Positions 1,413 to 62,116 are shown, counted from the first letter of the stretch. The stretch: 64,000 nucleotides of DNA from Hyaloraphidium curvatum SAG 235-1 (GCA_025558095.1 JAIVFI010000039.1:62001-126000); one strand, 5' to 3'. The notes: a model not told the origin generated them from the letters alone. Translations and numbers: made by a program.

Positions 1413-1506
1413 TGTGTGACGGGGAGCAGAGGGAAGCTGCGGTTTACGCGTCGATCCGTAAACAAACGCGTCCCGCCCCATTGCCCGGAATACGTCGCTT
1501 CCTACG

Positions 1507-2762
1507 ATGTCGGGCGGCGGCGGAAAGAAAGGCGTGCCGGCCAAGATGCCGGCCGAGGCCCTGGCGCGGTTCCCGAACGCGGAGCCGATCGGCGCGCCCA
1601 CCGCCACGGGCATGGCGCTGAGCGCGGTCGCGAACGCAAAGTACACGAGCGCGTTGGAGCGGCTGTCAACTGCTCTGGTTGCCCTGCGGACGGCAGCGGA
1701 GGCGAAGGTCGCGGCCGGCGAGGATGCCAGGAGCGCCGGAGGCCGCGGATGCACCGTGCGCCCGGCCGCGGACGCCGTGTCGGACCTGGGCAGAAAGGCG
1801 ATCATGGGCGCGCAGCTCCTCGGACCTGGCGCCGCAGCTCCTGGCCGCGCGTCCGTCCGGACCCCTCGTGCAGATCTCTTTCATGGACGCCTTCAGGGAG
1901 GCCTTCCCGCACATCAGGCGAATCGTGCGGATGGCATCGGACAAGGCGCTGCTCAACTACTTCGTCGCTGGGCCTGCCAAGTTGGTCGGGCTGCCCGTCG
2001 CCGACCCCAAAGGGTACTCCATTTTCAGCGTCCTCGACGTGGACCCGCGCTCCCTTCCCCGCATCGCATTCACGAAGATCTTTGGCGCTTACGTCAACAC
2101 GGACGTGTTCCAGATCGCGTGTCGCGTGCCCGTCGACGCGCTCTTCGGATTCCCCAACCACCAGTCCCTGCGCCGCCGCATGTCCAAGGAGCTCGATTTC
2201 TGCGACGTGCTCATCCAGCGAAACGCTGGACTGGATCCTCGCCTACGAGCTCGGCGGCCCGCCGGGGCCCGAGGACGCATGGAGCTTCGCCCCGAACGAG
2301 GCGGACAAGATCGCGCAGATGATCAGCCGCGTGGTGTGGGCCAGCCCCAAGGCGTGGAAGCGGCACATGGAGGCGCCCGACAGGGAGGCCCAGGGTCTTC
2401 CCACTCCCAGCGCTCTGCTGGACGCACTGGAGCGCATGGCAGCGGCGCTCCCTAAGGCGGACCAGGACACGGTCGGCCGGCAGCTCCGCCAATCCCGCAT
2501 CCGCTTCGCCGAGATCCTCGCCCCCGAGCAGGCCAAGGCGATGGAGGCGGCGGCGTCGCCCGCGCTGCGGCGGGACCTGGCGATGCTGCGCAAGGCCGAG
2601 GGGTTGCTGGCCAAGCACGATCAGGTGTTTTGCGACGGGTGCTGGACGCAGGCAAAGGGGCCGCTCAAGATGTGCTCGAGGTGCAAGGTCGCGTGGTACT
2701 GCTCGGTCGAGTGCCAGCGCAACGCTTGGAAGGAGCACAAGGTCGAGTGCGCTGCGGACTAA
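1507..2762 (+). CDS. MYND zinc-finger protein (spliced or frameshifted; exon structure approximate)
   Basis: C-terminus CDGC...CSRCKVAWYCSVECQRNAWKEHKVEC; upstream coding is spread over several frames. Confidence 0.7.
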
Positions 2763-12277: not shown

Positions 12278-15200
12278 TCACCGCCTGCCTTGGTACCGCG
12301 GGTCCGCCTCCCACCGCCTCGGATCCCTGGGATCGTAGCCGTATTCCCTCCGCGCCGCGTCTTCCCTCGACATCCCCGGAGGTCCCGGCGGCACGGGCGG
12401 TACGGGCATCCGGTCGTCCCTGGGAGGCCCGGGAATCCTGTCGTCCCGCGGCGGGGGAACCGGCATCCTGTCCCACTGCGGGTCCCTGTACCTCCCCGGC
12501 GGCACGTCGCGGCGGTCCGCGAGATCACGGCGCTCGTCGAACCCGCGCTCGGGGGGTGCGTCGCGCGGGAAGACGCCGGGTCCGCGGGGCGGCGGGGGAG
12601 GAGGAGGGACCGGCGCCCCGTAGTCGCGCCCGCGCGGATCCTGGCGCGCATCCCATTCCTTGCCCCTTGACGTGGTCGGTCCGTGCGGCTCGTACCTGCG
12701 GTCGTCGACGTGGATCCGAGCTTGCACCTCGTCCCAACCGCGAGGCCGTTCGGGAGGGAAGCTGGGCGCCGGCGGCCCGCCGGGCGCGCGTGCCTGCCAC
12801 TGGCCGGGCTCGGAACCCCGCGGCGGCGGTACAGGGCCGCGAAACTCGCCGCGGGGCGGCTCACCTCCGCGCCAACCGTACCCTTGCGAGGTCCCAGCTG
12901 CATACGGCTCGCCACGCGCGTCGCGATCCCGGTAGCCTGGGCCCGGTGGAGGCACGCTCCTGTCGAACCCCGAACCCGGCGGTCCCGGCGGCCCGGGTGG
13001 CGCAGACGGGGGCCCGCGGAAGTCGCGGTATCCCGGCGCCTGGGGAGGGTACTCCCCCGACCTAGGGGGGCCGTACCTCCCTTGCCCAGGCGCGACCGGC
13101 GTCCCCGGCTCGCCCCTCTCGCGCTCCCACTCTCGCGCGCGGAACTCACGCTCCTGACGTTCCCTTTCGCGGTCCCGGTCCGGCCGTTCCCCGTCCCTGG
13201 ACCTGCGCCGCGATCGGCCGCCCTCGGAGCTGCCGCTCGACGCGCTCGAGACGGAGGAGCTGCGCGGGCGCTCCAGCTTGGTCATCTTGATCTGGATTTG
13301 CCCGCGCTTGGCTCCTTGCTGCTGCTGGTGCTGCGGCGGCGGCGGTGGCGGCGGCTGGCCGGCGCGCAGCGCATCGACAGGCTGTACCGGCGAGCGGTAG
13401 TCGGGGTAGGCGCGCGGGTCGTAGCGGCCGCGGTCCACAGGGTCCACGTAGCGAGGCGGCTCCCCCGGCGGAGTCCTCCTCCCCGGCTGCGGCGGCGAAG
13501 CAGTTCTCGACGGCGGGAGCGGCTGCGGCTCGGGCGGCGTCGCGGCGCGCGAGTACGCTGCCGAAACGGGGGGAGGCGGCGACGCACGCATGACCTCGGA
13601 GCGCTGGGCAGGAGATCTGCCGTGCATGGGCGAGACCTTCGGATCCGCGGGTGTCCCGCCGCCATGGGGCGGCGTCCCGCCGTGCACCGAGCCCGCCTTG
13701 AGCGCCTCCACGGGCTGGTTGTAGATCGGGCTGGCCGGGATGGGCACCGGCGAGGCGATGGGCGAGACCTTGGCGGTGCCAGGGAAGGCCACGGGCGAGG
13801 CGGCAAAGGTCGGCGAGAGGGCATGCGCCGACGCGAGCGGGGGTGACACGGGACGCCGCGAAAGGGGGAGGTCGAGCTTGGGAACGGGGAAGTGCACCGT
13901 CGGCGACGCCGGCAGCTTGCCATCCCTGGGCGAGGAGGCCGACGGCAGGGGGAAGCGGCCGTCCTTGGGCGACGAGATGGGGAAGCGGGTGTCGCTGGGC
14001 GTCGGCAGCGGGAACTTGCCGTCCTTGGGCGTCGAGAGCGGGAACTTGCCCGTTTCGAGGGCCGGAGAGAGGGGGAACCTGCCCGAGTCCAACGCCGGAG
14101 GCAGGGGGAACTTGCCCAAGCCGGCCGCCGTCGGCGTGCTCAGCGGGAACCTGCCCGTGTCCGGCGTCGACGGCAGCGGGAACTTGCCCGAATCCAGCGC
14201 CCCCGGCAAGGGGAACCTGCCAGCTCCGATGTCCGCCGTCGCGACGACGGGGAACGTCCGCTCGGGCCTGATCTCGGGCGAAGCTGCCAACGAGCTCCCC
14301 GCCGACGCCGTCCGGGCGACCAGCTCGTCCTCCACCTTGGGAGCAAACAGCTCCAGCGGCGAGCGGATCGGGAAGTACGCCCTTGCCTCGTCCTTGCGCT
14401 CGAAAGCCGACCCCGCTGCGCCCATGCCCTCGCCCATTTCCGGCATCGTGGGCACGGTCGGCGTCGACGGCGTCGCGGGCTCGCCGCCGCCCTTCTTGCG
14501 CATGAAGTCCTTGAGCGTGAGCTTCTTGACCACCACGGGCGGCGGCGCGGGCGAAGGCGGTTTGGAGGGCGGCTCGACGGTGACCTCGGGCACGTCGACG
14601 TCCATCGCCGCCGCGGCGGGCGAGGCGGCGAACGCCTCGCCCCAGGCGCGCTTGGGATTACGCCCCGGCACCTTGGGCTTCGCCGCGACAGGCGGCTCGG
14701 CGGCAGCGAGGGCAGGCGGCGGCGCCACGTCCCCGAACATGCGCGCCGCCAGCTCCTGGTTGCGCTTTTCCTCCTCCTCCTTCCGCTTGCGCTCCCTCTC
14801 GGCCTTGCGCTCCTCCTTCTCCCTCTTCCTCGCCTCCTCCACCTGCCTCTTTGCCTCCTCCCTCCTCGCCTCCTCCTCCTCCGTGTCGGTGCCGCTCGAC
14901 TCTCCCGCCCACGTCCTGTTCCCGACCTCGGCCTTCTTCCCCCCTGCCCGCTCCTCCTCCACCCTCCGCACCAGGCACCCCGCCCCGCGCTTGCCGCACG
15001 CGCACGGGTACCCGACCCACTGCCTCCCCCCTTGCGCGGGCGGCAGCTCCAGGAGCACCTCCTCCCCCTCGCGTATCTCTCGCAGCGAAACCGCCACCAG
15101 CCTGACCCGCCGCGCGTTGGCCTCGTCGGGGTCGGCGTTCCACCGCATCTGCGCGCGGTCCGTGACGACGGTGCGCAGGGCGGCGTTGCCGCCCCCGCGG

Positions 15201-16754
15201 GGGCACGCCCACCGGAGGAAGCGGCCCGTTTCCTCGCCGACGCCGGTGCAGTCGACCATGTACGGGAGGCCGGGGAAGGGGAAGCAGAAGGGGGAGGGCG
15301 GGGGGCGGCGCGCGTTCTTCTTGGTCTTGGGGATCGGGCGCACGGTGCCTGTCCACCGGCGCTTAGGCACCGCCCGCGATGCAGCAGCGCGGATGGACCC
15401 ACCCTTGATCTCGCAGATGTACCTCCCCTTGGCGACGTCCCCCGCCACAAAGACTCCGTACTTGGAATCCATCGCCCTCTCCTGCACCTTCTCCCTCTCC
15501 CTCTCTGCCCCCCGCGTCCTGCGCCCGCCCTGGGCAGCCTGCTGCCGTGCCTCGCGCTCGTCCTCGGTCGCCTCCCCGTCCTCGTCGTCCTCCCCGTCTG
15601 TCGACTCGTACCCCTCCGGAATCGGCCGCACCGTCGCGCACGTGTACGCGTAGGGCAGCACGTGCGCGGGGAGGTACCGCGGCGTGCGCGCCCCCCTGAT
15701 GCGGGCGCGGGTCCACCCCGCCTCCGGTTTCGGCGCCGTGCGCGGGTGCTCGGCGTCGAACCGCGCGGCGATCTTGGCCAGCGGGGGTACCAGGTCGTCC
15801 GGGTGGAAAAGGGGCGGGTCGGTGCCGGCGAGGGGGTGGAAGCCCAGGGCGTAGGTGCGGTATTCCTCCGCCGGTCCCGGCTCGGCGGCCGAGGAGGGCT
15901 TCGGCTCGGGAGGGGGTGGGGGGCGGGGGGCGGCCTGCTGCGCGGCTGTGGCGCGGCGGGTCTGCTTCGGTTTCGGGGGTGGGGGAGGGGGGAGGCGCGG
16001 TTTCTCGGGCGGAGGGTCGGGTTTGGGGAGGGTGCGGCGGACGGGTTTCGGGAGCGGGGACTTCGGCGCCTTGGGCGGGGCGGCAGGCTGGTTGGGGTCC
16101 GTGCGCGCCTGGAGCTGCAGCGTGATCGCTCGCTGAAAAGCGAGAGGGTAAAGAGGTCAGAAGTGTTGTGGAGGTGGGAGATCAAGCCTGGGGAGGCCAG
16201 ATCTCCCTGTTCGAGGCACCCACCTGCTTGTCGACGTAGCGCGGCCGGCACATCTCGCAAAAGTACTGCTCGTCGTCCTTTGGCAGCGTCTCCTCGGTCA
16301 GGCCGACGCAGCGGATGTGCTGCCACACGCGGCAGCCGTCGCACTGGATGGTGTAGCCGTCGTCGTGGTCCATGGCGCACACGCAGCGGATCACGCCCTC
16401 GGCGTCGGCGGCGGCGGGCGCGGCGGTCTTTTTGCGCTTGCCCTGCAGGCCCTTTGGCTTGGGCCCGGGCTTCTTTGCGGTGCGGCCGTCCTTTGTGAGC
16501 CGCGCGTCTTTTACGTCCTCGTCCTTGTCCCTATTCCCCGCCTGACTGCCACCATTTCCCGGCTTAGAGGACGAGTCCTTGGAGCCCTCGGCGTCGGCGG
16601 CGCTGCCCCTCCGCGGCGGCCGCTCGGCGTCCGAGTCGTCCTCGGTCGCCGGCGCGTCGGGCGCCAGCGGCTCGTCGTCCGTGGCCGCCGCGGCCGCGTC
16701 GAACGCCGCTCCCGCGAGCGCCGCCGCGGCGGCGATTTCGGCCAGCGCCTCCAT
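12278..16754 (-). CDS. Set3/MLL5-like PHD finger + SET domain chromatin protein (spliced) with a long low-complexity C-terminus
   Basis: PHD: IRCVCAMDHDDGYTIQCDGCRVWQHIRCV...YFCEMCRPR. Degenerate SET: YGVFV...FLRWACP..NA...REIREGEEV, then post-SET CAC. Intron at about 16137-16222. Confidence 0.8.
13910..14225 (-). repeat. Coding peptide repeat G(K/R)FPL(P/S), about 9-10 copies, within the PHD/SET gene
   Basis: GRFPLP, GKFPLP, GRFPLS, GKFPLP, GRFPLS, GKFPLS, GKFPLP, TRFPIS, GRFPLP in the ORF translation. Confidence 0.8.
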
Positions 16755-35798: not shown

Positions 35799-36974
35799 AT
35801 GGCCGCCGCCGCGCCCGCAAAGACGACGCCCTTCTCCCTCGGGCTGTTCCAGGGTGTCCCCCAGCACGAAAACTTCCCGCGCTACAAGGAGCTGCTCGAT
35901 GTCGTCGAAATGCCCGCGTCGGAGAAACCCCACGTGTTCCCCGCCGGCGATGCGCTGACGCTCCCCGAGTCGTTCGAGTTCGACGGGCGGACCGTGAAGG
36001 TCGAGGACGCGCTCGAGGAGACCGACACGGCGGCGCTGCTCGTGCTCAAAGACGGCAAGATCGTGTTCGAGAAATACTTCCTGACCGGCGGCCAGGACGT
36101 GCAGTGGACCTCCTGGTCGGTCGCCAAATCCTTCGTCTCGGCGCTGGTCGGCATCGCCGTCGCCGAGGGCCACATCAAGTCCATCGAGGATCCCATCAGC
36201 GCCTACATCGATGTTCAGCCGGGCTCAGCGTACGACGGCGTGCGGATCAAGGACGTCCTCCAGATGTCCTCGGGCGCGCGCTGGCTCGAAGATTACTCGG
36301 ACCAGACCTGCGACGCGCTCCAGCTCGGCTTCTGCTTCTCGGGGGAAAACACGTTCGACGCCTTCGTCGCCGGCATGAAGAAGGAGCTCCCGCCCGCCAC
36401 CCTGTGCCGGTACAACTCGGGCGACACCCAGGCCCTGGGCACCCTCCTGATCAAGGCCACGGGCAAACCCCTCGCGGAGTACATGCGGGAGAAGCTCGTG
36501 CTGCCGCTGGGTTTCGAGCACTCGGGCTATTGGCTCGTCGACCGCGAAGCTCGCGAGGCCGCGTTCGCCGGGCTGCTGCTGACGGCGCGCGATTTCGCGA
36601 AGCTGGGCGAGCTCTACCGCCTCGGCGGCAAATGGCACTCCGGCGCGCAAATCGTCCCTGCGGAATGGGTCTCCGCCTCGTCCCACGGCGACGCGCCGCA
36701 CCTCGCGCCGGGCACCCCCGTGATCGGCGACGGCATCCGCCTTCCCTACGGGTACGGGTACCAGTGGTGGCTCATGCCCGGCCCGGGAGGCCAGTTCGCC
36801 GCGCAGGGGGTGTACAACCAGACGGTGCAGGTGGCACCGGAGGAGGGGGTGGTGGTGGTGAAGCTGTCGGCGACGAAGCTGTACGGCACCACGATGGGGG
36901 AGGAGACGAACAAGGGGGCGTTGAACGGGGCGCTGCTGGGGGCGATCGTTGCGGCGGCTGGGAAGGCCAAGTAG
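35799..36974 (+). CDS. Serine hydrolase, beta-lactamase class C / NylB-like, intronless
   Basis: SWSVAKSF (SxxK), YNSGDT (YxS), ARDFAKLG, YGYQWW, AQGVYNQ. Confidence 0.9.
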   Translation: MAAAAPAKTTPFSLGLFQGVPQHENFPRYKELLDVVEMPASEKPHVFPAGDALTLPESFEFDGRTVKVEDALEETDTAALLVLKDGKIVFEKYFLTGGQDVQWTSWSVAKSFVSALVGIAVAEGHIKSIEDPISAYIDVQPGSAYDGVRIKDVLQMSSGARWLEDYSDQTCDALQLGFCFSGENTFDAFVAGMKKELPPATLCRYNSGDTQALGTLLIKATGKPLAEYMREKLVLPLGFEHSGYWLVDREAREAAFAGLLLTARDFAKLGELYRLGGKWHSGAQIVPAEWVSASSHGDAPHLAPGTPVIGDGIRLPYGYGYQWWLMPGPGGQFAAQGVYNQTVQVAPEEGVVVVKLSATKLYGTTMGEETNKGALNGALLGAIVAAAGKAK

Positions 36975-52025: not shown

Positions 52026-55000
52026 TCAACCCACCTGTGGTTTAGCGCACAGCTCCTCCCACATCCTCCTTCCCGCCACCTCCCTCGCGAACGCGTGCAA
52101 CTCCGCATCCAGAGCGTTCATCGCCGCCAGTCTTTCCACGACGGGGTGACCGGCGGGGTAGGCCGCGGAGAAGGACGAGTTCTCGAGGGTGCCGGCCCGG
52201 TGCTTGTTCACCTGGCACGTACCGCGTCAGCGACGCCGTTCGGACGCGGCAAGATCTGGTCACGCACGTCGAATTCTTTCCACCCGAGCTTGGAAGCCAG
52301 CTGCCCCGCCGTCGCCGCGAAACTCGCCGGGTCGTCCGCCACGAGGACGACGGAAAAGTACCCCTCCAGCGTCCGCTTGGCCCTGTCCAGATGGTGCCGG
52401 GTGCAGGGGCCGAGTCCGCATCCGCCAAACACGCGGACATGGAAGTCATTTAGCCACAAGTGCGCGTCGGGTAGGGATTGCGCCTTGGCCATCTCCTCCA
52501 GCGTCAAGTTGCCCCAGTCCCCGCCCACCGCCCCGTGCTGGCCGGAGGTTAGCGAATAGACTGGGAGGGGGTAGTGGGAGGGGGAGTGGACTGTGCGGGG
52601 CGCTCGCAAGCTCGCCGTAGGGCCCCGCAGACTAGGGGACCTTGGCTACACGGTCTGTGCTTGCGTCCTTGTCTCACTGCCTTGCCGACCCCTGCTTTGC
52701 CGGTCCCCTCACCTACTTGCTAAGCAATGTGCTTAGCAACTTGCTTACCTTTTCTAAAACCAACTATTCTAGTCGTTTTCATAGTCGTTTTCTTGGCTTG
52801 TATAGTCGATTTTATACCTCATTTTGGCTCTGATAGTCGATTAGTCGATTTTGAAAAAAAACTTAACCCGTTTTCAAGTTTCACCTAGGTCCTACCCTAT
52901 ACAACAACTTAGGCCACCTTTTCCTCCAAAATCGACTAATTAACTATTTGCTTTGTTTCATGCTTCAACTTCTAGATCTCTTACCATTTTCCTTCTAGCT
53001 TCTTTTTCTCAAAATCGACTAGAACCCAACTTGGTCCTAGTCGTTTTCTAATTCACAAAGAATTTCATGACAGTGATGACAACTTTTTTGAAAAGTGGTT
53101 TGGCGAAGCCATATTTTGTGTCTTCACCACTCTTTTTCCCCACCAGTCTTACCCCACCACTGAGTACCCCACCTGTCTTACCCCACCACTGAGTACCCCA
53201 CCACCTCTTCCCCCACCACCTCTTACCCCGCTCCCCCATCGCAACTTCGTTGCTACCACGTGCTTTGAACGAAGTTCATTTGTGGTTTGGCGTAGCCATT
53301 TCTCCCGCCCCCGCTCCCTCGCGTACCAAAAGGAGAGAAATCCCAGCAAGCCTGGTACATCTTTGAAAATCATATTTGGAACAAAGTAGACAGCAAGTCA
53401 GTGAGCCTACAAATCAAGTCTGAGGCATACACAAGATTATTTCATACGGCGGAGAGAGTATACAGAGGATTGCAAATTCAGACGGACCAAGAGCGCAAGC
53501 AGCAGGAACAAAAGCTAAAGCAGATAAGAAATGTGATCAAGTCATTGCAATCAGCAGGAACAAAACGATCAATAACAGAGGAGTATGCGACATGTTGTTT
53601 GAAGAGGGACTTTTTGAGTCTTTTGAACAAGAAGAAGAATTTGCTTCCCTTTAAAAACGGAGTCTATGAACTGGAGACATCAAACTTCAGGGCAGGGCAA
53701 CCAGAGGACTACATGACCAAGTCGGTAAGATTTGACTATGATCCATTGAAAATGAGAGACAGTGCCATGCTAGCCGAATTGATGAAATTCTTGGAGTCAG
53801 TCTTTCCGGATGCAAGTCTAAGAGCCTGGTGCATGCGATACTTTGGAAGCTTTTTGGCGGGATATACACGTGATCAAATTTTTGTGTTTGGTCACGGGTC
53901 AGGTTCGAATGGGAAAGGCATTTTGCTCAAACTTCTGGAGCATGTGCTAGGGGACTTTGTTGCGAAGATTGAAGCATCTTTTCTGAGTGAAACGACAAAA
54001 GCAGATTCAGCAACACCAACACTGACATCGATGGTAGGAGCACGTCTAGTGCTTATATCAGAGACAGTGGATGGTGCAAAGCTGAATGAGCAGAGATTCA
54101 AAGCTCTTTGTGGAGAGGATACACTTACTTACAGAGAACTATTTAGCGAGATGTCATCATTTGTGCCGGATTTCAAGCTGTTCATGGTGTGCAATTCACT
54201 ACCTATTTTTAATGGCTCGGACTGGGCAATGCGTCGGCGTATAAAGGTGATACCATTTATGTCAACATTCAAGAAACTGGACGAGAATCCAGACCCAACA
54301 AAAAATGAGTATCCATTGGATTCAACTCTGGGAGAGAGAGCACCAGAATGGAAATATGCGATGATGCATTTGCTTCTGGAGGGATACAAAGAGTATAAGG
54401 AGCACGGATTAGGACCAGAACCAGCAACATTGAAGGCAGCAACGCAACTATATGCGAGGACAAACAACATTTATGAAGAGATTCGTGACAATTATTTGGA
54501 AAAAGATGCATCAAGTGGGGTGACAACGGAATGGTTTGTGAATCAAGTCAACAAAAAGTGGAACGATTTCTATGGGGAGTCAATGAAAAAACCAGGGAAA
54601 CAGAAAATGTATGAGAGTATTGATGTGGCGCTGTTGAACGAGAAGCAAAAGACGGAGAAGAGAAGGTTTGGGAATCCGCAAAGATACGGATGGAAAGGGT
54701 GGAGGAGGGTGAAAGAGGCCGAAACCACGTGGATGGACATATAGCGTACAGCTTCGCTGAATCACATAAAAACAGGTTTTTGCAAAGCAGATGTGTGAAA
54801 GATGTTTCTGCACGAAGTGCTCTCTGAAATAGCAAAACACTGTGACATAGATACCCGATGCAAGTTGGCTGAGGCACTTCTGCTTGAAAAGAATGCATTT
54901 ATTGTGAAATTATCGCCCGGAAACCAAGGAAGTATTACAACAGATGCTTTTCTTAAGTCGCATCAAGCAGCAATAACTGCAAAGATGAAGAAGCGAGGGC

Positions 55001-58000
55001 AACTCAAAATACATATCGAATGCAAGTTTCATGTTGGCATACTATTCAAAGGTAAAAGGGTGGGGATGTGGTATCAAGCAAATCGGATGAAGTGCAGCGT
55101 ATCGTGGACAAATGACTTTGGAGAGTTTGATCAGATGAGATTTGCAGCAATCAACAAGGAAGACCATGATCTTACTAGTTGGAGGTACTTTGTTGAAGGT
55201 GACATGTTATGTGAATACGGGAGTGTGAACCAAACAAGGCAGCAACTAAAAGAGTTTGAAGAGCAAATTGAATCAGTGGAGTCATATATGTATGGGGAAT
55301 AATTGTCTATTCAGCCAAGTATTTTGCTTCGAGATCAGGATAGCGATTTCCAAATCTATCATAAACACGGTATTCAAACTTGAATCCAGTAGCTAAAGCA
55401 GCATTCTTTTTCGCGATATTGCGTGCTCTTTCTATCTCGTATGTGTACTGAGATTTCACTTCAATGAAAGATGATCAGCAAAAGCAATGTAGAAATCAGG
55501 GATGTAGTCTTTCCAACGATTGTTGTCAGCAGGATCTTGATACCTTACTCTGGGAACAGCTTCGTCTCCGTGAACTATGCCAATGTCTCTGAACTCTCCG
55601 GAATCCACGAAAAATTTCTCAAATCCTTGCATGCCAAAATATTCATCACCGAATTTGGAAACATAATCATATTTGCGGAAAGGGGGAGAGACAGGTTCGT
55701 CAATCGACAAGGTTTCAATGTTTGGTGCAAAAAAGTGGTCGAGAAACGACTGTGGGAGAATGTATTCGGTAGTAGTCATGTATATAAGAGACAAAACATC
55801 GAAAAACATGCTCAGAATACGAAGAAAGTTCACACAAAACGAGTTTTTTACCAACACAAACTTAATTGAAGCCAAGTGATTTGAATTAAGTATGAAGCAA
55901 CTTGCATAAAAAGGCCAAGGTTGCAATGGTAAATTAATGATTCTTAAAGCACGTGGTCTGGGCCAATGTTTGCCATGGAAGAACAAACTTACAAGGAAGA
56001 GACCGGATTGCCAGCATACACAAGCCGTACTTATCTTGTTTCGTTTGGACACATTAAAGATGACAAGAGTTTGAGCCGAGCAATAGTATTAGCAAAGCAT
56101 AAGGAGAAGGGCATCAACAGTTTGGAACTACTGGAAAAAGAGACGCAGGAGCTTCATGAGAAACTAGGGATAAAATCACCGCAATGGGAAAAAAGAGACA
56201 AATGGTTTCCCTGGTCAGAGCTGAGGGAACTGGCAGAAGAAGCAGAGAGCAAGTGTTGGAAGGTCCTGGGCTTAAGAATTGCGTTCTATGCAACGAGGGA
56301 TGATGAGTCATATTATCAATACTCACTCTTAAACGCAAAAGTTCGAAATGCCAAGTTGCAAGTAGACATTTGCCCAAGAGAGGAGGATCAGGGACACTAT
56401 AAAGGCCATTTTAGTTTGATACTGGACTTTCACCGCTACAAAGGGATAAAGAGAGAAGTCCGTGGATATGTCAAGGGCAAAGTTCCGTCAAACAAAGTAA
56501 TTCAAGGTAAAGATCGCACGAAATTGGTGTTGGAGGAATTGACACGTGTTTTTCAGAGGGTGTACTAATATCAGACTTGAGGAAACAAGAGAGGGAAGCA
56601 CGCATGAAACAAAAGGATTTTGTTGAAAAGCTTCGGGAATAGCACAAATGAACTTCGTTCAAACAAAGCAACTTCGTTGCAAAAATGACTTCGTCATATG
56701 ACTTCGTCAAACCACATGTGACTTGGCGAAGCCCTATAAGGGAGGGGGGGCGGGAGGCATAACCAACAGGGCTTCGCCCAAATGACTTCGTCAAGCCACG
56801 TGACTTCACCGAAGGTGAAATGGCGAAGCCATGTGAGAAATGACTTCGTCAAATCACGTGGTTGCACGAAGTGCTATGAGGGAGCGGGGTAAGGGAGCGG
56901 GGTAAGGGAGCGGGGTAAGGGGGAGAAGACAGCACTTGGTGAGGCAGAAGGCCTGAACACCTGAACACATTTGGCTTCGCCAAAGCACGTGATTGGACGA
57001 AGTCCTGTTGGTATGGACGAAGTGGATATGGGCAGAAGGCCGACAGAAAAGAGTCAGAGAAAGTGGATGGTATTTTGTGAGAAAGCACAGGGAAACAAAG
57101 CTATATATATATATAGTCAGAGATGTCAGAAAAGTCAGAATAAGAAAAAAATAATTATTATAATAAAAGAGAGAGGACTATGTAGTAAGAGAGTAGTAAA
57201 AGAGATACATGTCTTGAAAAGTTCTGACATTGCTGACATTTCTGACAAAGTAAGGTAGCTAAGCAAGATGCTAAGCAGTTTGCTAAGCAAGTAAGTAGAA
57301 CAAAGAAGGGGTAGGTGAAGCTCGTGAAGCCGTGCCCGGGAGGGACCCGGAGGGAGGCCCAAGGGGGATGGGCCGGAGCGAGGGACGAGCGCAGGACCCC
57401 TCTCCCCCTCCTGCCAACTCAGGCATATCGTATCTTGAGCAAAACCCCGACGCTGAGGTGCATATTCGTCGGAACCGGACTCAATACGCATCGGTATTGC
57501 CCCGTGCATTTGCCGATGAACAAATGTCACGATATCTTGCACCCGCAGCGCGGAGAGTTTTGGTGGATATTGAGGCATTGCTTAGACAACAAGTTGAGTT
57601 TGATCCCGCCGGGTGGGAAGCGCAAGATGTGGATTTGGGGGTGGAGGAAGAAGGAGGGGATGAAGATGATTAAAGCACCTTCGGTATATGACTTCGTCAA
57701 ACCACAGGTGACTTGGCGAAGCAATATAGCACTTCGTGCAACCACGTGATTTTGCGAAGCAATATAGCACTTCGTGCAACCACGTGATTTTGCGAAGCAA
57801 TTACTCAAATGATTGGATCAATCGATCAGGCAGAAACTTGCATAAGTCTTTTACAAGGGCTGTACACCTTAACCACTCGGTCAACCTGTCGAGAGAGCAA
57901 ATTGAAAGGGTGGGACACGTGGTGCCGGGACATTGCGGTGGGGCATCGCGCTCGGACACAGCACTTCAGCCTTATACGGCAAAGCCAAGTGAATGCCGTT

Positions 58001-61000
58001 CACAGCACGTAATTTGGCGAAGCCATATATTGCATCGCAAAACCACGTGCTTTAGCGAAGCTATATGAGCGTAAGCCCGCTTAGAAGAACCACGACGCGT
58101 CGTTCACATAGGCACCAATGTATTCGTTGCGAAACGTAAACGTAATGGAGCACCAACCTCACTCACACGATAAGGAACCGGGTAGTAGACATGAAAGATC
58201 AGCACAGATGCGACTGCCAGATGAGCTGTGGTTGCAAATCATGAATAGTCTTGGGTTCGATGACAGAAAAACATTGGGAAAATGGTTGGGGTGGACGACA
58301 GTTCCTCGATTCAGAATCCAAGGCACTAATACACAAATAAAACGAGCAACACAGGAAATGGAAAAGGAAAGCAAAGGTAAGAATTTTAAAGTGAATGTTC
58401 TAATTGACCACAAAATACAAATCATTCGAGAGGTGCAAGAGCATTGCATGAAGACAAGAGTATGGTTTCTGGGAAGCAATATAAGGTTTGAGCTTTATCC
58501 TGAGTTGCCAGATGGTATATGGGTAGTTTGGGATGGGGACAGAGTATTGTTAAAGTATGAGTATTCAAATGTAAGTTGGAAAGATTTAGAACAAGTGCGT
58601 AAAAGGTTGAACTCAGTGTGTATGTAGTGAACATAAGTGAGTTTATTTTTTCCAAGCACAGCGGGAAGTCCGGGCAGGGAACGGGTCCGAGCAGAGTGCA
58701 AGAGAGCGAACGTCTGGGCGCTCCGCGGGAGGCAGGTTGCGGGGCGATGCGGAACCGATAGAGCTTCCGAGTCCGGCAAAACTCTGTCCCGTCTCAGAAG
58801 AACGCGTTTCGTGACCCCATTGCGCAACCACTGGGGGCTCGCTCTTGTTACCGCATCGCGTTCAGACGCCACCGCGCTTGAACGGGCACGTGGCGCTCCC
58901 ACGTCGCGCTCCGTGTTCCGAACGCACGGCGCGGCTTTCCCGTTTTCGCGCTTTGCGGTCTCGCGAACTTGTTCCCGCCGCAGAGCGGCGGCTCCCCCGG
59001 GCTCCAACGCCACCGCCTTTCCCCCAAACCACACGTGCTGGAACGCGCTACCTCGCACGGGACGCTGCGCTCCAGCCTCTGGCTTGCTCGGGGCTCTGAA
59101 CCCACAACGCGCCTTTCCCGCGCGCGCGCCGTGATACTGTGCTGCGCGGACCTTCGCTCCTCGGACGCCGCGCTCGGACCGGCCGAGGCTTCAATTGACC
59201 TTGAAAATGGGTGATGTTCGTTTGTTCTTCGCTTTTTTTCCTGTTCCCTATACCTTAATTACTATGAGTTCAGGTTGTGACACTCCGTCAATACCTTCTT
59301 CAAGTTCGCAACGTCGATCCTTCAGTGGAGCGTCGCCTACGAAAGAAGGTGTGAGCCTTGAGGATTTTGTGGCAAACTTTCTAAAGACTCCGGATGAACT
59401 CATTTATCCCCGACTCGTTTCAAAGCTTCGATACCGATGGTCTCAAGCATGCATTACGTATCTTGAGCAAAACCCCGACGCTGAGGTGCATATTCGCCGG
59501 AACCAGACTCAGTACACATCGGTTTTGCCTCGTGATTTTGCACATGAAAAAATGTCACCCTTTCTTGCTACCGCTGCCGATAGGGTTGTTGCAGATATTA
59601 GAGCATTGCTTAGACAAGAACTTGATCAAGTGGCTGCTCATAATGTGGATTTGGATTTGGGGCCAGAACAAGAAGGGACGGATCCAGATGATGATGAACC
59701 TTAGGCATAAGCAATATATGACTTCGTCAAGTCACGTAGTTGAAACGAAGTTTCATTGGCGAAGCCATGTGAGAAATGACTTCGTCAAATCACGTGGTTG
59801 CACGAAGTGCTATGAGGGAGCGGGGTAAGAGGTGGTGGGGGAAGAGGTGGTGGGGTACTCAGTGGTGGGGTAAGACAGGTGGGGTACTCAGTGGTGGGGT
59901 AAGACTGGTGGGGAAAAAGAGTGGTGAAGACACAAAATATGGCTTCGCCAAACCACTTTTCAAAAAAGTTGTCATCACTGTCATGAAATTCTTTGTGAAT
60001 TAGAAAACGACTAGGACCAAGTTGGGTTCTAGTCGATTTTGAGAAAAAGAAGCTAGAAGGAAAATGGTAAGAGATCTAGAAGTTGAAGCATGAAACAAAG
60101 CAAATAGTTAATTAGTCGATTTTGGAGGAAAAGGTGGCCTAAGTTGTTGTATAGGGTAGGACCTAGGTGAAACTTGAAAACGGGTTAAGTTTTTTTTCAA
60201 AATCGACTAATCGACTATCAGAGCCAAAATGAGGTATAAAATCGACTATACAAGCCAAGAAAACGACTATGAAAACGACTAGAATAGTTGGTTTTAGAAA
60301 AGGTAAGCAAGTTGCTAAGCACATTGCTTAGCAAGTAGGTGAGGGGACCGGCAAAGCAGGGGTCGGCAAGGCAGTGAGACAAGGACGCAAGCACAGACCG
60401 TGTAGCCAAGGTCCCCTAGTCTGCGGGGCCCTACGGCGAGCTTGCGAGCGCCCCGCACAGTCCACTCCCCCTCCCACTACCCCCTCCCATAGACAGGGTG
60501 TCCACAACGGGGGAGACGAACCTTCCAGTGGGAGAGTATCCGATCCAGAGGGTGCCGCACAACCGCGACAAACACGGCGTCCCCCGGGGACGGCAGCGGC
60601 GGGAGCTCCCACGGCTCCAGCGCCAGAAAGTCCACCCCCTTTTGCGCGGGGTCGAGAAACTCCGCGAGTCTCTGGGCGTCGGTGATGGGCTCCATTGGCC
60701 GCCAGAGGCAGTTGTCCGTTTGGTTTGTCCGGTACCCATTGGCCGCGGCCAAGGTGCAGACCGTGCTTCCCCCCGCCTTGTGGACGTGCGCAAAGACCAC
60801 ACGGTTGGACCGTAGCTTGGCGCGTCGTTCGGCGACCGCCCGCCCGGCCGCCAGCGCCGGCTCGTCGAACCCTGTCGGCCGCGGGCGAACCAGCCCGCCC
60901 GGCGGCCACGGCAGCGCCGGCGCGCACGGCTCCAGCGATGTCGGCAGCAGAAAGAGCGCCAGCCCCGTGAGCGCCAGCAGCAGCCGGCCCACGTTCGGGG

Positions 61001-61010
61001 AGGGCTGCAT
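52026..61010 (-). CDS. Golgi-type sulfotransferase-like protein, 314 aa; exons 61010-60522, 52537-52268, 52211-52026; intron 1 contains the 7.9-kb element
   Basis: N-terminal anchor, 5'-PSB FAHVHKAGGST, 3'-PB VRHPLDRILS, C-terminal NALDAELHAFA; all exon lengths are multiples of three. Confidence 0.8.
52562..53235 (+). repeat. Left terminal inverted repeat (674 bp)
   Basis: Reverse complement of 59816-60489; mirrored ORFs 52642-52833(+) and 60218-60409(-) translate identically; first mismatch at 53236/59815. Confidence 0.97.
53320..54744 (+). CDS. D5/P4-type superfamily 3 helicase (D5_N + ATPase), 5'-truncated, primase domain missing
   Basis: WYIFENHIW, LLPFKNGVYEL, Walker A GSGSNGKG, Walker B VLISE, motif C MVCN, Arg finger MRRRIKVIPF. 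In-frame TAG at 53293-53295 with no ATG before the domain starts. Confidence 0.9.
   Translation, partial: RVPKGEKSQQAWYIFENHIWNKVDSKSVSLQIKSEAYTRLFHTAERVYRGLQIQTDQERKQQEQKLKQIRNVIKSLQSAGTKRSITEEYATCCLKRDFLSLLNKKKNLLPFKNGVYELETSNFRAGQPEDYMTKSVRFDYDPLKMRDSAMLAELMKFLESVFPDASLRAWCMRYFGSFLAGYTRDQIFVFGHGSGSNGKGILLKLLEHVLGDFVAKIEASFLSETTKADSATPTLTSMVGARLVLISETVDGAKLNEQRFKALCGEDTLTYRELFSEMSSFVPDFKLFMVCNSLPIFNGSDWAMRRRIKVIPFMSTFKKLDENPDPTKNEYPLDSTLGERAPEWKYAMMHLLLEGYKEYKEHGLGPEPATLKAATQLYARTNNIYEEIRDNYLEKDASSGVTTEWFVNQVNKKWNDFYGESMKKPGKQKMYESIDVALLNEKQKTEKRRFGNPQRYGWKGWRRVKEAETTWMDI
54802..55302 (+). CDS. Element-borne protein with an F-box-like N-terminus
   Basis: EVLSEIAKHCDIDTRCKL; C-terminus resembles that of 58208-58627. 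Confidence 0.6.
   Translation: MFLHEVLSEIAKHCDIDTRCKLAEALLLEKNAFIVKLSPGNQGSITTDAFLKSHQAAITAKMKKRGQLKIHIECKFHVGILFKGKRVGMWYQANRMKCSVSWTNDFGEFDQMRFAAINKEDHDLTSWRYFVEGDMLCEYGSVNQTRQQLKEFEEQIESVESYMYGE
55307..55779 (-). pseudogene. PD-(D/E)xK (TnsA-like) endonuclease of the large-DNA-virus type, one frameshift at about 55468
   Basis: MQGFE...VPRVRY...YIPDFYI in one frame continues as IEVKSQYTY...NIAKKNAALATGFKFEYRVYDRFGNR in the next; adding one base gives 157 aa. Confidence 0.8.
55966..56568 (+). CDS. Element-borne hypothetical protein (200 aa)
   Basis: Intronless AT-rich ORF with the same purine-rich coding strand as its neighbours. Confidence 0.65.
   Translation: MFAMEEQTYKEETGLPAYTSRTYLVSFGHIKDDKSLSRAIVLAKHKEKGINSLELLEKETQELHEKLGIKSPQWEKRDKWFPWSELRELAEEAESKCWKVLGLRIAFYATRDDESYYQYSLLNAKVRNAKLQVDICPREEDQGHYKGHFSLILDFHRYKGIKREVRGYVKGKVPSNKVIQGKDRTKLVLEELTRVFQRVY
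56649..57005. promoter_or_regulatory. Cluster of C-GAA-G/C-TTC-G mini-hairpins and CACGTG-centred dyads
   Basis: 13 short inverted repeats around TTC or GAA; further clusters at 53241-53298, 57677-58063 and 59719-59810. Function unknown. Confidence 0.75.
56821..56893 (+). repeat. 73-bp exact direct repeat of 59757-59829 (entry into the right TIR), running into three 13-bp GGGAGCGGGGTAA units
   Basis: Direct comparison of the two segments. Confidence 0.9.
57417..57673 (+). pseudogene. 5'-truncated paralogue of ORF 59264-59704
   Basis: YLEQNPDAEVHIRRNRTQYASVLPRAFADEQMS versus YLEQNPDAEVHIRRNQTQYTSVLPRDFAHEKMS; homology starts abruptly at about 57418. Confidence 0.8.
57716..57800 (+). repeat. 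38-bp tandem repeat (about 2.2 copies) of the hairpin dyad unit
   Basis: GCAATATAGCACTTCGTGCAACCACGTGATTTTGCGAA occurs twice. Confidence 0.9.
58208..58627 (+). CDS. Element-borne F-box-like protein (alternative start 58118)
   Basis: MRLPDELWLQIMNSLGFDDRKTL matches the F-box LPxE(L)xxxI consensus. Confidence 0.7.
   Translation: MRLPDELWLQIMNSLGFDDRKTLGKWLGWTTVPRFRIQGTNTQIKRATQEMEKESKGKNFKVNVLIDHKIQIIREVQEHCMKTRVWFLGSNIRFELYPELPDGIWVVWDGDRVLLKYEYSNVSWKDLEQVRKRLNSVCM
59264..59704 (+). CDS. Element-borne hypothetical protein with an acidic tail
   Basis: Conserved in-element paralogue at 57417-57673 supports coding status. Confidence 0.7.
   Translation: MSSGCDTPSIPSSSSQRRSFSGASPTKEGVSLEDFVANFLKTPDELIYPRLVSKLRYRWSQACITYLEQNPDAEVHIRRNQTQYTSVLPRDFAHEKMSPFLATAADRVVADIRALLRQELDQVAAHNVDLDLGPEQEGTDPDDDEP
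59816..60489 (-). repeat. Right terminal inverted repeat (674 bp)
   Basis: Reverse complement of 52562-53235. Confidence 0.97.
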
Positions 61011-62116
61011 GAAAAGGGCGTTTCACAGCGGAGGAATATGGGAAACGCTCCGGCGGCGGCCTGCGCCCGCAACGAAACGCCAAAGGACGGCAACGCACCA
61101 AAATCAATGAATCCCACGGGAAACTCACCAGGTAGTGCGGCAAAGTGTGATTGAATATGCTCGTAATGTATTCCGCGGGTTTCCTGTTGGGCAAGCGCGC
61201 CAACCAAGATTGTCCGTTTTGCATGGCCGGCGGACCCTACGACGGCCAGTCGGCCCCCTAAATCAAAGGGCCAACCAACACAATGAAGTTCATGATGTCC
61301 AATTTCAAGAACGCGGCGGCGCCTAAGAATGAGGCCAAGCCGTGCCCGGGGCCTGCCGTTCCCGCGACACCCCCGCGATGGAGACAAATAGGTGGAACGC
61401 GCGCCACCTTCGTTGGGCGATTCGCGCGTGAAAGCGGGCAAGGCCACCTTTCTGCGGTGCTGGAGATCGGAACCTGGCCGGTAGGAGCCTGGGTGGAATG
61501 TTCGGGGGTGTGCACACAGAAGGTTCTGCTTTTCGTTGTGATGGGGATTCGACGAAAGATATACAAGGGGGCGCCGCTCGCCTGGCTCCTCTTCTCTGCG
61601 CCCCCAAGGAACCGAAACACCGGCACAGGCTACGACCACGTAGTCTTGGAAGGCTCCTGGGGCCCTGGAAGTCCAAGGTCGAGGAGTTCCGTGTCTCCAA
61701 GGTGATGTGCCTTGCCGATGCTTTCGTGCCCAAGGCAGGAGAATTGCACGGCCGTTGCGAGCTCGAAGGAGGTCGGCAAGTGGAGCACCGGCAAGCGGAG
61801 CAGACAGGTACACTCAAAGAGGCGACGCGGAGTTCCTCCTCATCTCCGCGGAGAAGAACGCGGTACGAGGCGTGCTCCAAAGACAAAATGAACGTGCCGC
61901 GAAGCGAGCGTGAACGATTTCCTGCAGGATTCGTGGGGTTTGGGAATCACCTTTTACGCGTGCGGGGCCCGGTGGCGGAGGTCGGCCGGCTCGTGAGTGG
62001 GTGACACTTTTCCGGCTTGCCTCCCCGCGCCGCACCCCAGCAAATCCCCTGCCGGCCCTCTCCGCCGGCCTTTCTCGAGCGTTCTCTTTCCCTTTCCTCC
62101 GTTCCCGCAGGCAGCC

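What the first reader, a model, noticed from the sequence alone, without database searches (positions are those of the whole stretch)
52557..60494. Complete 7.9-kb virus-like TIR element with a D5 helicase but no integrase, polymerase or capsid
Seen: perfect 674-bp TIRs, TG...CA termini, a TAGAC 5-bp duplication (equally readable as 6-bp ATAGAC with a 1-nt shorter right end), a strong drop in GC and intronless ORFs. Known: long TIRs with D5-like primase-helicases occur in Polinton-like viruses and virophages. Transpovirons are capsid-less TIR plasmids of similar size but use an SF1 helicase. TG...CA with a 5-6 bp TSD is the footprint of retroviral-integrase/DDE enzymes. Inference: the ends are pristine while internal genes are broken, so this looks like a non-autonomous member of a possibly undescribed fungal virus-like element family, moved in trans by a helper elsewhere in the genome or by an infecting DNA virus.
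Basis: partly seen in the sequence, partly recalled or inferred. Interest (0 to 1): 0.95.

Follow-up and report, generated by a model that had tools for sequence, protein, structure and literature searches.

The report
Broken virus-like mobile element in fungus
A 7.9-kb low-GC stretch of foreign DNA with identical inverted ends sits inside a gene of a chytrid-like fungus. It is a defective, patched-together copy of a small mobile element built around a viral-type primase-helicase, a kind of element hardly known in fungi.

Summary
The inverted ends are 682 nt long and 100% identical, not 674. The termini are TG...CA, flanked by a TAGAC duplication. GC is 0.46 inside against 0.67 outside. The two host ORF pieces on either side share one reading frame, so this is a real insertion into a host ORF. 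The host is most likely Hyaloraphidium curvatum or a near relative.

The "D5 helicase" is only the C-terminal D5_N + SF3 helicase part of a primase-helicase of about 960 aa. About 495 N-terminal codons, including the whole AEP primase domain, are missing. The retained 471 codons have no stop or frameshift but no start ATG.

The element is a mosaic:
- a third, diverged copy of the terminal repeat lies inside it;
- next to that copy is a 5'-truncated paralogue of an end-proximal ORF;
- there is a 0.57-kb block of host-like composition;
- there is a nuclease-like gene with one frameshift.

No integrase, polymerase or capsid was detected. The other ORFs have no detectable relatives.

The closest helicases (36-49% identity) come from Quaeritorhiza and Gonapodya and from unnamed contigs, mostly 5.9-7.4 kb long.

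Best reading: a non-autonomous, rearranged member of a small AEP-SF3 replicase-module family, analogous to transpovirons, integrated by an integrase supplied in trans. I rate it a new variant of a known kind. The contexts of the relatives could not be read.

The parts
52557..52561 (.). Left copy of the target-site duplication (TAGAC)
   Evidence: Read directly. Identical to 60490-60494.
52562..53243 (+). Left terminal inverted repeat, perfect block. From the outside inward: G-rich terminus starting TG; AT-rich middle with six TAGTCG units; six CCCCACC units in 29-nt repeats
   Evidence: 682 nt, 100%; 29-nt repeats at 53138-53219; motif counts.
53329..54744 (+). 5'-truncated primase-helicase gene. 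Only the D5_N + SF3 helicase (P4-family primase C-terminal) part is retained. One truncation removes about 495 codons. The retained part has 0 stops and 0 frameshifts, and no ATG at its start
   Evidence: domains; one tblastn HSP in one frame, matching residues ~496-958 of ~960-aa relatives; the relatives carry Prim-Pol/AEP + D5_N + DUF5906; all 38 invariant columns of the 17-sequence alignment, including the Walker A residues, are kept; no start codon.
54802..55302 (+). ORF A, 166 aa, no detectable relatives
   Evidence: nothing significant. AF2 single-sequence model pLDDT 36. The GC1>GC3>GC2 pattern matches that of the helicase gene.
55310..55779 (-). Nuclease-like gene on the minus strand, broken by one frameshift. 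The PD-(D/E)xK-like reading rests on two short motifs only
   Evidence: The pieces were translated and searched apart and never joined. No profile or structure hit is significant. The codon-position GC pattern favours the minus-strand reading over the overlapping plus-strand ORF 55471-55869.
55966..56568 (+). ORF C, 200 aa, no detectable relatives
   Evidence: no homologue among 5.8 billion proteins; nothing significant. AF2 pLDDT 40.
56782..57407 (+). Third, diverged copy of the terminal repeat in right-end orientation. Its inner border is 90% identical to that of the right end, and it ends in ...CA
   Evidence: 112 nt at 90% to 59718-59829; alignment shows the same order of parts; the remainder scores 189 against 99-120 for shuffles (z 7-8) and 33-118 for control segments; its inner 99 nt fold as a branched palindrome, z -6.5.
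57408..57673 (+). E', a 5'-truncated paralogue of ORF E (one truncation; no stop or frameshift in the retained part). It starts within about a dozen bases of the outer end of the third repeat copy
   Evidence: 63% aa identity, E 8e-34, to E residues 83-166; 178 nt at 81%.
57691..57801 (+). 38-nt tandem repeat (2.9 copies) of the palindromic CACGTG / TTGGCGAAGC unit. The same unit recurs at 53090-53300, 56640-56985, 58005-58065 and 59720-59810
   Evidence: 13 of the 23 window matches to TTGGCGAAGC (one mismatch allowed) lie in the 7.9-kb element, against 6.8 expected for the whole window; fold z-scores from -2.9 to -6.5.
58118..58627 (+). ORF D, 169 aa, sub-threshold F-box hint only
   Evidence: F-box E 0.11, below the cut-off; nothing significant.
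58628..59200 (.). Block of host-like composition inside the element, with no coding periodicity
   Evidence: GC 0.654, CpG o/e 1.28, TpA 0.35, against 0.672 / 1.12 / 0.48 in the host flanks and about 0.41 / 0.7 / 0.55 in the neighbouring modules; no frame has host-like GC3; no match to the rest of the window.
59207..59704 (+). ORF E, 165 aa, with an acidic tail. It lies next to the right terminal repeat and has no relatives outside the element
59808..60489 (-). Right terminal inverted repeat, perfect block
60490..60494 (.). Right copy of the target-site duplication (TAGAC)
60495..61022 (-). Upstream piece of the host ORF that the element interrupts
   Evidence: GC3 0.83; weak Sulfotransfer_2 match, E 0.005, below the cut-off. 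Same frame as 52211-52556 across the empty site, by arithmetic.
52211..52556 (-). Downstream piece of the interrupted host ORF
   Evidence: GC3 0.81. No Pfam hit.

Best explanation
This is a recently integrated, non-autonomous and rearranged copy of a small TIR-bearing DNA element. The replication gene of its lineage is an AEP primase fused to a D5/P4-type SF3 helicase.

Shown:
- Identical 682-nt inverted ends, a 5-bp duplication, and insertion into a host ORF.
- A helicase fragment whose conserved residues are all kept but which lacks the primase half and a start codon.
- A third, diverged end copy.
- A truncated gene paralogue and a host-like block.

Inferred:
1. The left 4.85 kb (left end, helicase, ORF A, nuclease-like gene, ORF C, third end copy) is the remnant of one unit. 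That unit would have been about 6.3 kb with the full gene.
2. This unit lay in or beside a related element, next to a copy of gene E. Deletion and accretion fused the two.
3. The outer 682 nt of the two ends were made identical by copying one end from the other, either during replication as a linear molecule or by conversion.
4. An enzyme that makes 5-bp staggered cuts and accepts TG...CA ends, most likely a retroviral-type (rve/DDE) integrase, inserted the composite. The element does not encode this enzyme, so a helper supplied it.
5. The palindromic CACGTG / TTGGCGAAGC units just inside the ends are the cis-acting sites (origin or promoter).

This copy cannot prime its own replication.
For: - Ends, duplication and composition.
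- Sharp fall from 100% to 70% identity at the inner edge of the arms.
- Gene fragment.
- Third end copy and E/E'.
- No integrase, polymerase or capsid family in any ORF.
- Relatives: the helicase falls in a 24-member clade with Quaeritorhiza haematococci and Gonapodya sp. proteins. Full-length members are AEP + D5_N + SF3. Of the 18 contigs in the counted set (full list in the report, paragraph 6), 13 are 5.9-7.4 kb long and two more are 8.4 and 9.4 kb. This matches the ~6.3 kb inferred for the left unit.
- Literature: mavirus and Maverick/Polinton elements make 5-6-bp duplications and appear as low-GC islands in a high-GC host (PMC8547959). Transpovirons are ~7-kb capsid-less TIR replicons derived from polinton-like viruses (PMC5499653). 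A 2026 preprint proposes mobile AEP-SF3 replicase modules, tandem integration followed by deletion, and endonuclease neighbours (10.64898/2026.10.13.758929).
Against: - Only one copy was seen.
The 'small element family' therefore rests on contig lengths alone.
- ORFs A, C, D and E have no relatives, so nothing shows that they belong to a conserved gene set. A very divergent small structural or integration protein among them cannot be excluded.
- The integrase inference rests on end structure only.
- Identical ends are equally explained by a very recent insertion of a copy that already had identical ends.
- The left subterminal region is homologous to the other two, so the order of the rearrangements is not determined.
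Confidence: 0.55

Rival explanations
1. A deletion derivative of a full-size polinton-like virus or virophage-like element (15-40 kb) that has lost its capsid module, its integrase and half of its replicase gene. On this reading there is no small-element family, and the helper is simply an intact copy of the same virus.
For: - TIRs, a 5/6-bp duplication, a low-GC island and a primase-helicase next to one end are all typical of endogenous mavirus-like elements and polinton-like viruses (PMC8547959).
- Internal deletions are evident here.
- Polinton-like integrases have been reported on giant-virus contigs of zoosporic fungi (PMC13533422).
Against: - No remnant of any morphogenetic or integrase gene was found in 5 kb of non-helicase sequence.
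- Full-length relatives of the replicase sit mostly on 5.9-7.4-kb contigs, too short for a capsid-encoding genome plus a 3-kb replicase. Contig length is weak evidence, however.
- The IMG/VR scan found no relative above 33% identity.
Confidence: 0.2
2. An ordinary non-autonomous cut-and-paste transposon whose terminal repeats belong to a conventional DDE transposon family. It has picked up fragments of other DNA: a piece of an endogenised giant-virus or other viral D5-like gene, a piece of host DNA, and gene fragments. This would resemble the gene-fragment-carrying transposons of plants.
For: - The helicase is a fragment without a start codon.
- The interior is a mosaic of different compositions, including a host-like block.
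- One ORF is present as a full copy and as a truncated copy.
- D5-like genes of giant-virus origin are known in zoosporic fungi (PMC5294986, PMC13533422).
Against: - The terminal repeats share the low GC and CpG depletion of the helicase module.
- The palindromic unit of the subterminal regions also recurs between the internal genes. Ends and interior therefore look like one system.
- The helicase fragment keeps every invariant residue of its clade.
- A third end copy lies just where a ~6-kb unit would end.
Confidence: 0.15
3. An assembly artefact: a chimeric or palindromic join that put foreign or contaminant DNA into a fungal contig.
For: Perfect long inverted repeats and an abrupt composition change can arise from chimeric long reads. 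Only one assembly was seen.
Against: - An exact 5-bp duplication lies precisely at the ends of the repeat.
- The host ORF is in frame across the empty site (plus arithmetic).
- The contig is 485 kb and carries annotated host genes on both sides.
Confidence: 0.03

Closest known systems
Transpovirons of Mimiviridae
   Same: About 7 kb, linear-type organisation with several-hundred-nt terminal inverted repeats. One large helicase gene plus a few small ORFs, and no virion genes. They can be found integrated and depend on other elements. They are thought to derive from polinton-like viruses by loss of the capsid module (PMC5499653).
   Different: Their helicase is a superfamily 1 (Tlr1-like) helicase fused to an inactivated family B polymerase, with an adjacent divergent Zn-ribbon gene (PMC5499653). 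Here the helicase is superfamily 3 of the D5/P4 type and no Zn-ribbon gene was found. The host here is a fungal nuclear genome, not a giant virus of amoebae. This is a functional analogue, not a member.
Mobile AEP-SF3 replicase modules proposed for the polinton-like supergroup (bioRxiv 10.64898/2026.10.13.758929)
   Same: An AEP-SF3 replicase lineage bracketed by its own repeats, without a paired integrase. It shows tandem accretion and deletion of elements and has an endonuclease-like neighbour gene.
   Different: Those cases lie inside viral genomes or endogenous viral regions of protists and animals, and several lack flanking repeats. Here the element has long TIRs and a clean target-site duplication in a fungal chromosome. 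This copy has lost the AEP half.
Endogenous mavirus-like virophages and polinton-like viruses
   Same: A low-GC island in a high-GC host, TIRs, 5-6-bp duplications, a primase/helicase gene next to one end, and compact same-strand genes (PMC8547959).
   Different: They are 14-40 kb and encode major and minor capsid proteins, a packaging ATPase, a protease and usually an integrase. None of these was detected here.
Polintons / Mavericks
   Same: TIRs of hundreds of nt, a 6-bp duplication (possible here under the alternative reading), and integration by a retroviral-type integrase.
   Different: [quoted passage not shown] Both were tested here and not found. They are 15-20 kb.
D5-like primase-helicases of giant viruses and their endogenous copies in zoosporic fungi
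   Same: The same AEP + D5_N + SF3 architecture in full-length relatives. The solved structures of ASFV C962R and poxvirus D5/E5 are the best PDB matches, E about 1e-12. D5-like genes are known in Allomyces and in fungal giant-virus regions (PMC5294986, PMC13533422).
   Different: There is no other giant-virus gene in the 64-kb window. The gene lies in a 7.9-kb TIR/TSD-bounded unit. Similarity to phage/plasmid P4-family primases is at least as strong.
P4-family primase-helicases of phages, satellites and plasmids
   Same: The helicase fragment passes the curated cut-off of TIGR01613. It matches PHROG primase families at 1e-57 and 878 phage records at 25-28% identity.
   Different: Those are prokaryotic replicons. 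Here the element is in a eukaryotic nuclear genome, with TIRs and a duplication, and its clade is 36-49% identical to fungal proteins.

Membership tests
Transpoviron | About 7-kb DNA with long terminal inverted repeats and no virion genes | tested here: met
   7,928 bp, 682-nt arms. No structural-protein family hit.
Transpoviron | Tlr1-like superfamily 1 helicase fused to an inactivated family B polymerase (PMC5499653) | tested here: not met
   The helicase is D5_N + DUF5906 / TIGR01613, superfamily 3. No polymerase domain was found.
Transpoviron | Zn-ribbon gene adjacent and divergent to the helicase gene | tested here: not met
   No such domain in any ORF. The neighbour, ORF A, is co-oriented.
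Transpoviron | Propagation with a giant virus | not testable with these tools
   No read, coverage or virus data are available.
Polinton / Maverick | [quoted passage not shown] | tested here: not met
   No hit in Pfam, PHROGs or NCBIfam.
Polinton / Maverick | Retroviral-type (rve) integrase | tested here: not met
   No hit in any ORF of the element.
Polinton / Maverick | TIRs and a 6-bp target-site duplication | tested here: inconclusive
   TIRs are present. The duplication reads as 5 bp, or as 6 bp if the right end is one base shorter.
Polinton-like virus / virophage | Morphogenetic module: double jelly-roll major capsid protein, penton protein, packaging ATPase | tested here: not met
   No hit. 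The unassigned ORFs are 166-200 aa, too short for a major capsid protein. Fold comparison was impossible because the models were poor (pLDDT 36-40).
Polinton-like virus / virophage | Genome of 14-40 kb | tested here: not met
   7.9 kb.
Mobile AEP-SF3 replicase module (proposed, 2026 preprint) | AEP primase fused to an SF3 helicase | tested here: inconclusive
   Only the SF3 half is present in this copy. Full-length clade members have both halves.
Mobile AEP-SF3 replicase module (proposed, 2026 preprint) | Replicase bracketed by its own repeats, with no paired integrase | tested here: met
Endogenous giant-virus (Nucleocytoviricota) region | Several giant-virus core genes clustered together | tested here: not met
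   This is the only low-GC island in the window and it holds one viral-type gene. The flanks carry host genes.
P4-family primase (TIGR01613) | Score above the curated cut-off for the C-terminal domain | tested here: met
   150.9 bits against 108.7.
Non-autonomous cut-and-paste DNA transposon | The same ends shared with an autonomous copy that encodes a transposase | not testable with these tools
   No eukaryotic genome collection is available. The terminal 20-mer is absent from IMG/VR.

The most novel reading that the evidence does not exclude
Zoosporic-lineage fungi harbour a family of capsid-less DNA replicons of about 6-8 kb. These have long terminal inverted repeats and an AEP-SF3 primase-helicase, and would be a fungal counterpart of transpovirons with a different replicase. 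They would enter nuclear chromosomes with a 5-bp duplication by borrowing a TG...CA-recognising integrase from another resident element: a polinton-like virus, a giant virus or even an LTR retrotransposon. The window holds a defective composite member caught shortly after integration.
Probability: 0.3. Interest if true: 0.85.

Novelty: new variant of a known kind. Interest (0 to 1): 0.6.

Why it matters
- No double-stranded DNA virus has been isolated from fungi, and viral regions were detected in under 1% of fungal assemblies (10.1101/2025.04.19.649669). Giant viruses of zoosporic fungi were recognised only recently (PMC13533422).
- A small element with intact ends, a clean duplication and a viral-type replicase in a monoblepharid-like fungus would show that the smaller parasites seen around giant viruses in protists also exist in fungi.
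- It would give a concrete, bounded example for the current proposal that AEP-SF3 replicase genes travel as mobile modules in their own right.
- It implies that a compatible integrase is, or recently was, active in this genome.
- The insertion also interrupts a host ORF.

Tried and rejected
Searches that gave no usable context:
No contig of any relative could be read, which was the largest loss.
- The genome-contig scan returned only prokaryotic loci at or below 34% identity.
- The metagenome scan gave one 2.6-kb contig at 44% identity and one distant locus.
- The IMG/VR scan gave 22 loci at or below 33% identity. None shares anything but the helicase with the element, and none of those checked has TIRs.
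- Exact-pattern scans of IMG/VR with the terminal 20-mer and with a subterminal 20-mer found nothing.
- A blastn search of the whole element against phage records found no match.

ORF searches:
- ORF C had no homologue.
- Scans of viral contigs with ORF A and with one nuclease-like piece found nothing.
- PDB sequence searches of ORFs A, C, D, E and the nuclease-like pieces found nothing significant.
- Rfam and tRNA scans found nothing.
- Single-sequence AlphaFold models of ORFs C and A were too poor (pLDDT 40 and 36). No fold search was run, because matches to such models are meaningless.

Ideas rejected:
- ORFs A and D as paralogues.
- One long ORF running through the helicase, A and C. They share a frame, but 11 stops lie in that frame across the stretch, and the helicase ends where its relatives end.
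- The plus-strand ORF 55471-55869 as a gene (codon-position pattern).

- The two frames of the nuclease-like gene were not joined for a profile search or a fold.
- No consensus of the three terminal-repeat copies was built.
- The empty site was not reconstructed. The frame was worked out by arithmetic.

Disclosure: the bounds of the two frame pieces of the nuclease-like gene appear in my tool calls, in the generic ORF table and in my working thoughts. Together they bracket the frameshift.

Full report
1. Observation. The repeat finder gives one outstanding inverted pair: 52562-53243 and 59808-60489, 682 nt and 100% complementary. The left arm starts with TG and the right arm ends with CA. TAGAC flanks both ends, at 52557-52561 and 60490-60494. 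The 6-bp reading with a one-base-shorter right end is also possible. The terminal 28-mer occurs nowhere else in the window. GC is 0.460 inside and 0.672 outside, and this is the only such island in the 64 kb. On the minus strand, two ORF pieces with host-type third-position GC above 0.8 abut the element. Their frames coincide when the 7,933 bases of element plus one duplication copy are discounted. I did this by arithmetic and built no joined sequence. The upstream piece has a weak, sub-threshold sulfotransferase match. The feature is therefore a genuine insertion with a target-site duplication, inside a host ORF.

2. Host. The long high-GC3 ORFs include zf-MYND and F-box-like proteins, which indicates a eukaryote. 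Four intronless ORFs are exact NCBI proteins on one 485,554-bp contig; their names are masked. The best named relative of one of them is a Hyaloraphidium curvatum protein, 67% identical, on a 476,666-bp contig. This fits a paralogue in the same or a closely related genome. I take the host to be Hyaloraphidium curvatum or a near relative (Monoblepharidomycetes). This is an inference, not a proof.

3. The helicase.
- ORF 53401-54744 hits D5_N and DUF5906. It also hits PHROG primase families, but only in their C-terminal halves. It passes the curated cut-off of TIGR01613, the P4-family primase C-terminal domain.
- In the PDB the best matches are ASFV C962R and poxvirus D5/E5, at about 1e-12. Phage primase/helicases are 25-28% identical.
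- An exhaustive search of 1.84 billion representatives gives a distinct top group at 36-49% identity, then a plateau at 30-35%.
- The full-length members of the top group are 928-1057 aa. Most of those scanned carry a Prim-Pol or C962R-type AEP domain, and all carry D5_N and DUF5906.
- tblastn of 17 such proteins against the window gives a single HSP in a single frame for all but one. The exception, P0028, carries three D5_N stretches and gives three HSPs in the same frame. For the ~960-aa proteins the HSP spans 53329-54711 and covers only their residues ~496-958.
- The gene is therefore truncated once. About 495 N-terminal codons, including the whole AEP domain, are missing from the entire window. 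The retained 471 codons have no stop and no frameshift. They keep all 38 invariant columns of a 17-sequence alignment, including Walker A. There is no ATG at the start of the fragment.

4. The rest of the element.
- Downstream lie ORF A (166 aa) and ORF C (200 aa) on the plus strand. Between them is a minus-strand gene that reads in two frames, that is, with one frameshift. Its two pieces carry, in order, motifs that I recognise from memory as the hallmarks of PD-(D/E)xK nucleases. No profile or structure search confirms this, so it is only a lead. The pieces were searched apart and never joined.
- From 56782 to 57407 lies a third copy of the terminal repeat in right-end orientation. The first 112 nt are 90% identical to the inner border of the right end. 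The remainder is strongly diverged but keeps the same order of parts. It scores 189 against the right end, compared with 99-120 for shuffles (z 7-8) and 33-118 for control segments. It ends in CA.
- Within about a dozen bases of that end begins E', which matches residues 83-166 of ORF E at 63% amino-acid identity. ORF E lies next to the right repeat.
- Next come a 38-nt tandem repeat and ORF D (169 aa, sub-threshold F-box hint). After those lies a 573-nt block whose GC, CpG and TpA values are those of the host rather than of the element, with no coding periodicity.
- Count of broken genes: primase-helicase, one truncation; nuclease-like gene, one frameshift; E', one truncation.
- ORFs A, C, D and E are uninterrupted but have no detectable relatives. 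Single-sequence structure models were unusable.

5. Cis elements. TTGGCGAAGC, with one mismatch allowed, occurs 13 times in the element; the whole window has 23 matches against 6.8 expected. It is part of an imperfect palindrome of about 30 nt centred on CACGTG. The units cluster just inside all three end copies and between genes. The ~95-nt segments inside the right end and inside the third copy fold as branched palindromes, with z -3.7 and -6.5. Identity between the left and right ends drops from 100% over 682 nt to 47/67 in the next 67 nt. The perfect block therefore looks like a homogenised or freshly copied unit laid over older, diverged homology.

6. Relatives.
- Named members of the helicase clade are hypothetical proteins of Quaeritorhiza haematococci and Gonapodya sp. 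JEL0774. A neighbour-joining tree puts the window protein in a 24-member clade with them.
- Contig lengths for 18 relatives (the ten proteins; P0029, P0030, P0035, P0037, P0164, P0045 and P0167; P0002): 7291, 6983, 7291, 6704, 5909, 7182, 6019, 6459, 6921, 7408, 6288, 6411 and 7029 bp, plus 8390 and 9442, and three shorter contigs (3065, 3875 and 4891 bp). Thirteen of the 18 therefore lie between 5.9 and 7.4 kb.
- Other clade members and close relatives were left out of this count. They sit on contigs of 2.0-3.6 kb (P0001, P0003, P0004, P0006, P0031), 12.2 kb (P0041), 19.6 kb (P0005), about 51-53 kb (P0040 and a cluster member) and 198 kb (P0028).
- The left unit of the window element (left end to third end copy, 4,846 bp) plus the missing ~1.5 kb would be about 6.3 kb, the same size class as the 13.
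- This is suggestive only.

7. Mechanism. The best reading is a non-autonomous, rearranged member of a small AEP-SF3 replicase-module lineage.
- Shown: the anatomy described above.
- Inferred from established knowledge: a 5-bp duplication with TG...CA ends is the footprint of retroviral-type integrases. Mavirus and Maverick/Polinton elements make 5-6-bp duplications (PMC8547959). The element has no such gene, so integration was in trans.
- The internal end copy abutting a truncated E-like gene fits tandem or nested integration of related elements followed by deletion. This process was described for the polinton-like supergroup in a 2026 preprint (10.64898/2026.10.13.758929). That preprint also proposes that AEP-SF3 replicases move as modules and notes endonuclease neighbours.
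- Identical outer ends alongside a diverged inner copy fit end-copying during a linear replicative phase, or conversion. They fit a very recent insertion equally well.

8. Comparison and novelty. The element works like a transpoviron in size, TIRs, a single large helicase gene, lack of a capsid and dependence on others. It fails the defining helicase type and the Zn-ribbon neighbour (PMC5499653), so it is not a member. It is not a Polinton, since it has no protein-primed polymerase and no integrase. It is not a polinton-like virus or virophage as it stands, since it has no morphogenetic module and is only 7.9 kb. It is not a giant-virus region. I found no description of TIR/TSD-bounded AEP-SF3 elements in fungi in the searchable literature. 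D5-like genes in lower fungi have been reported only as giant-virus traces (PMC5294986, PMC13533422). I rate it a new variant of a known kind, with interest 0.6. The anatomy is clean and timely, but only one defective copy was seen and the family context is indirect.

9. Limits and conduct.
- No repaired, consensus, joined or ancestral sequence was built.
- The places of breaks are not listed here. The bounds of the two frame pieces of the nuclease-like gene do appear in my tool calls, in the ORF table and in my working thoughts, as stated under Tried and rejected.

Noticed in passing
window 35799-36971 (+): An intronless beta-lactamase/transpeptidase-like gene. Apart from one Hyaloraphidium curvatum paralogue (67% identity), its closest named relatives are all bacterial serine hydrolases at about 58-63% identity (Actinomycetota, Phenylobacterium, Pseudomonas), alongside many unnamed metagenome proteins. 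This looks like a bacterial gene transferred into the fungus and then duplicated.
   Followed up: partly
L021:1997-2582 (metagenome contig Ga0182030_10180751): The closest metagenomic helicase relative (44% identity) appears fragmented upstream. It is followed at once by a CCCACC-rich tract, then an AT-rich region with many CGGAGATA units in both orientations, and a 79-nt inverted pair. This layout recalls the terminal repeat of the window element (C-rich units plus short iterated units) but in a different arrangement.
   Followed up: partly
relatives P0017-P0045 (no locus available): Thirteen of the 18 contigs counted for proteins of the helicase clade are 5.9-7.4 kb long, and two proteins of different clusters both sit on 7,291-bp contigs. 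This may mark a size class of complete small replicons.
   Followed up: partly
window 53329-56568 and 58118-58627: The low-GC modules are CpG-depleted (o/e 0.64-0.71) with an excess of TpG and CpA (1.2-1.5). The host flanks are not (CpG o/e 1.12). This fits past cytosine methylation and deamination of the element lineage, or a native viral composition.
   Followed up: no
window 60583-60622 and 60898-60937: A 40-nt direct repeat (73% identity), GC-rich, lies within the host ORF piece just right of the insertion. It probably encodes a repeated Gly/Ser/Ala-rich stretch of the interrupted protein.
   Followed up: no
window 12281-16156 (-): A very GC-rich (0.72-0.75) stop-free stretch of 1,292 codons with GC3 0.88 and only a weak, sub-threshold SET-domain match. 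This may be a large lineage-specific host gene.
   Followed up: no
window 483-1805 (-): A host ORF with a DUF4037 domain (E 1e-18). The first-ATG model is not an exact NCBI protein, so the annotated gene model differs or is absent.
   Followed up: no
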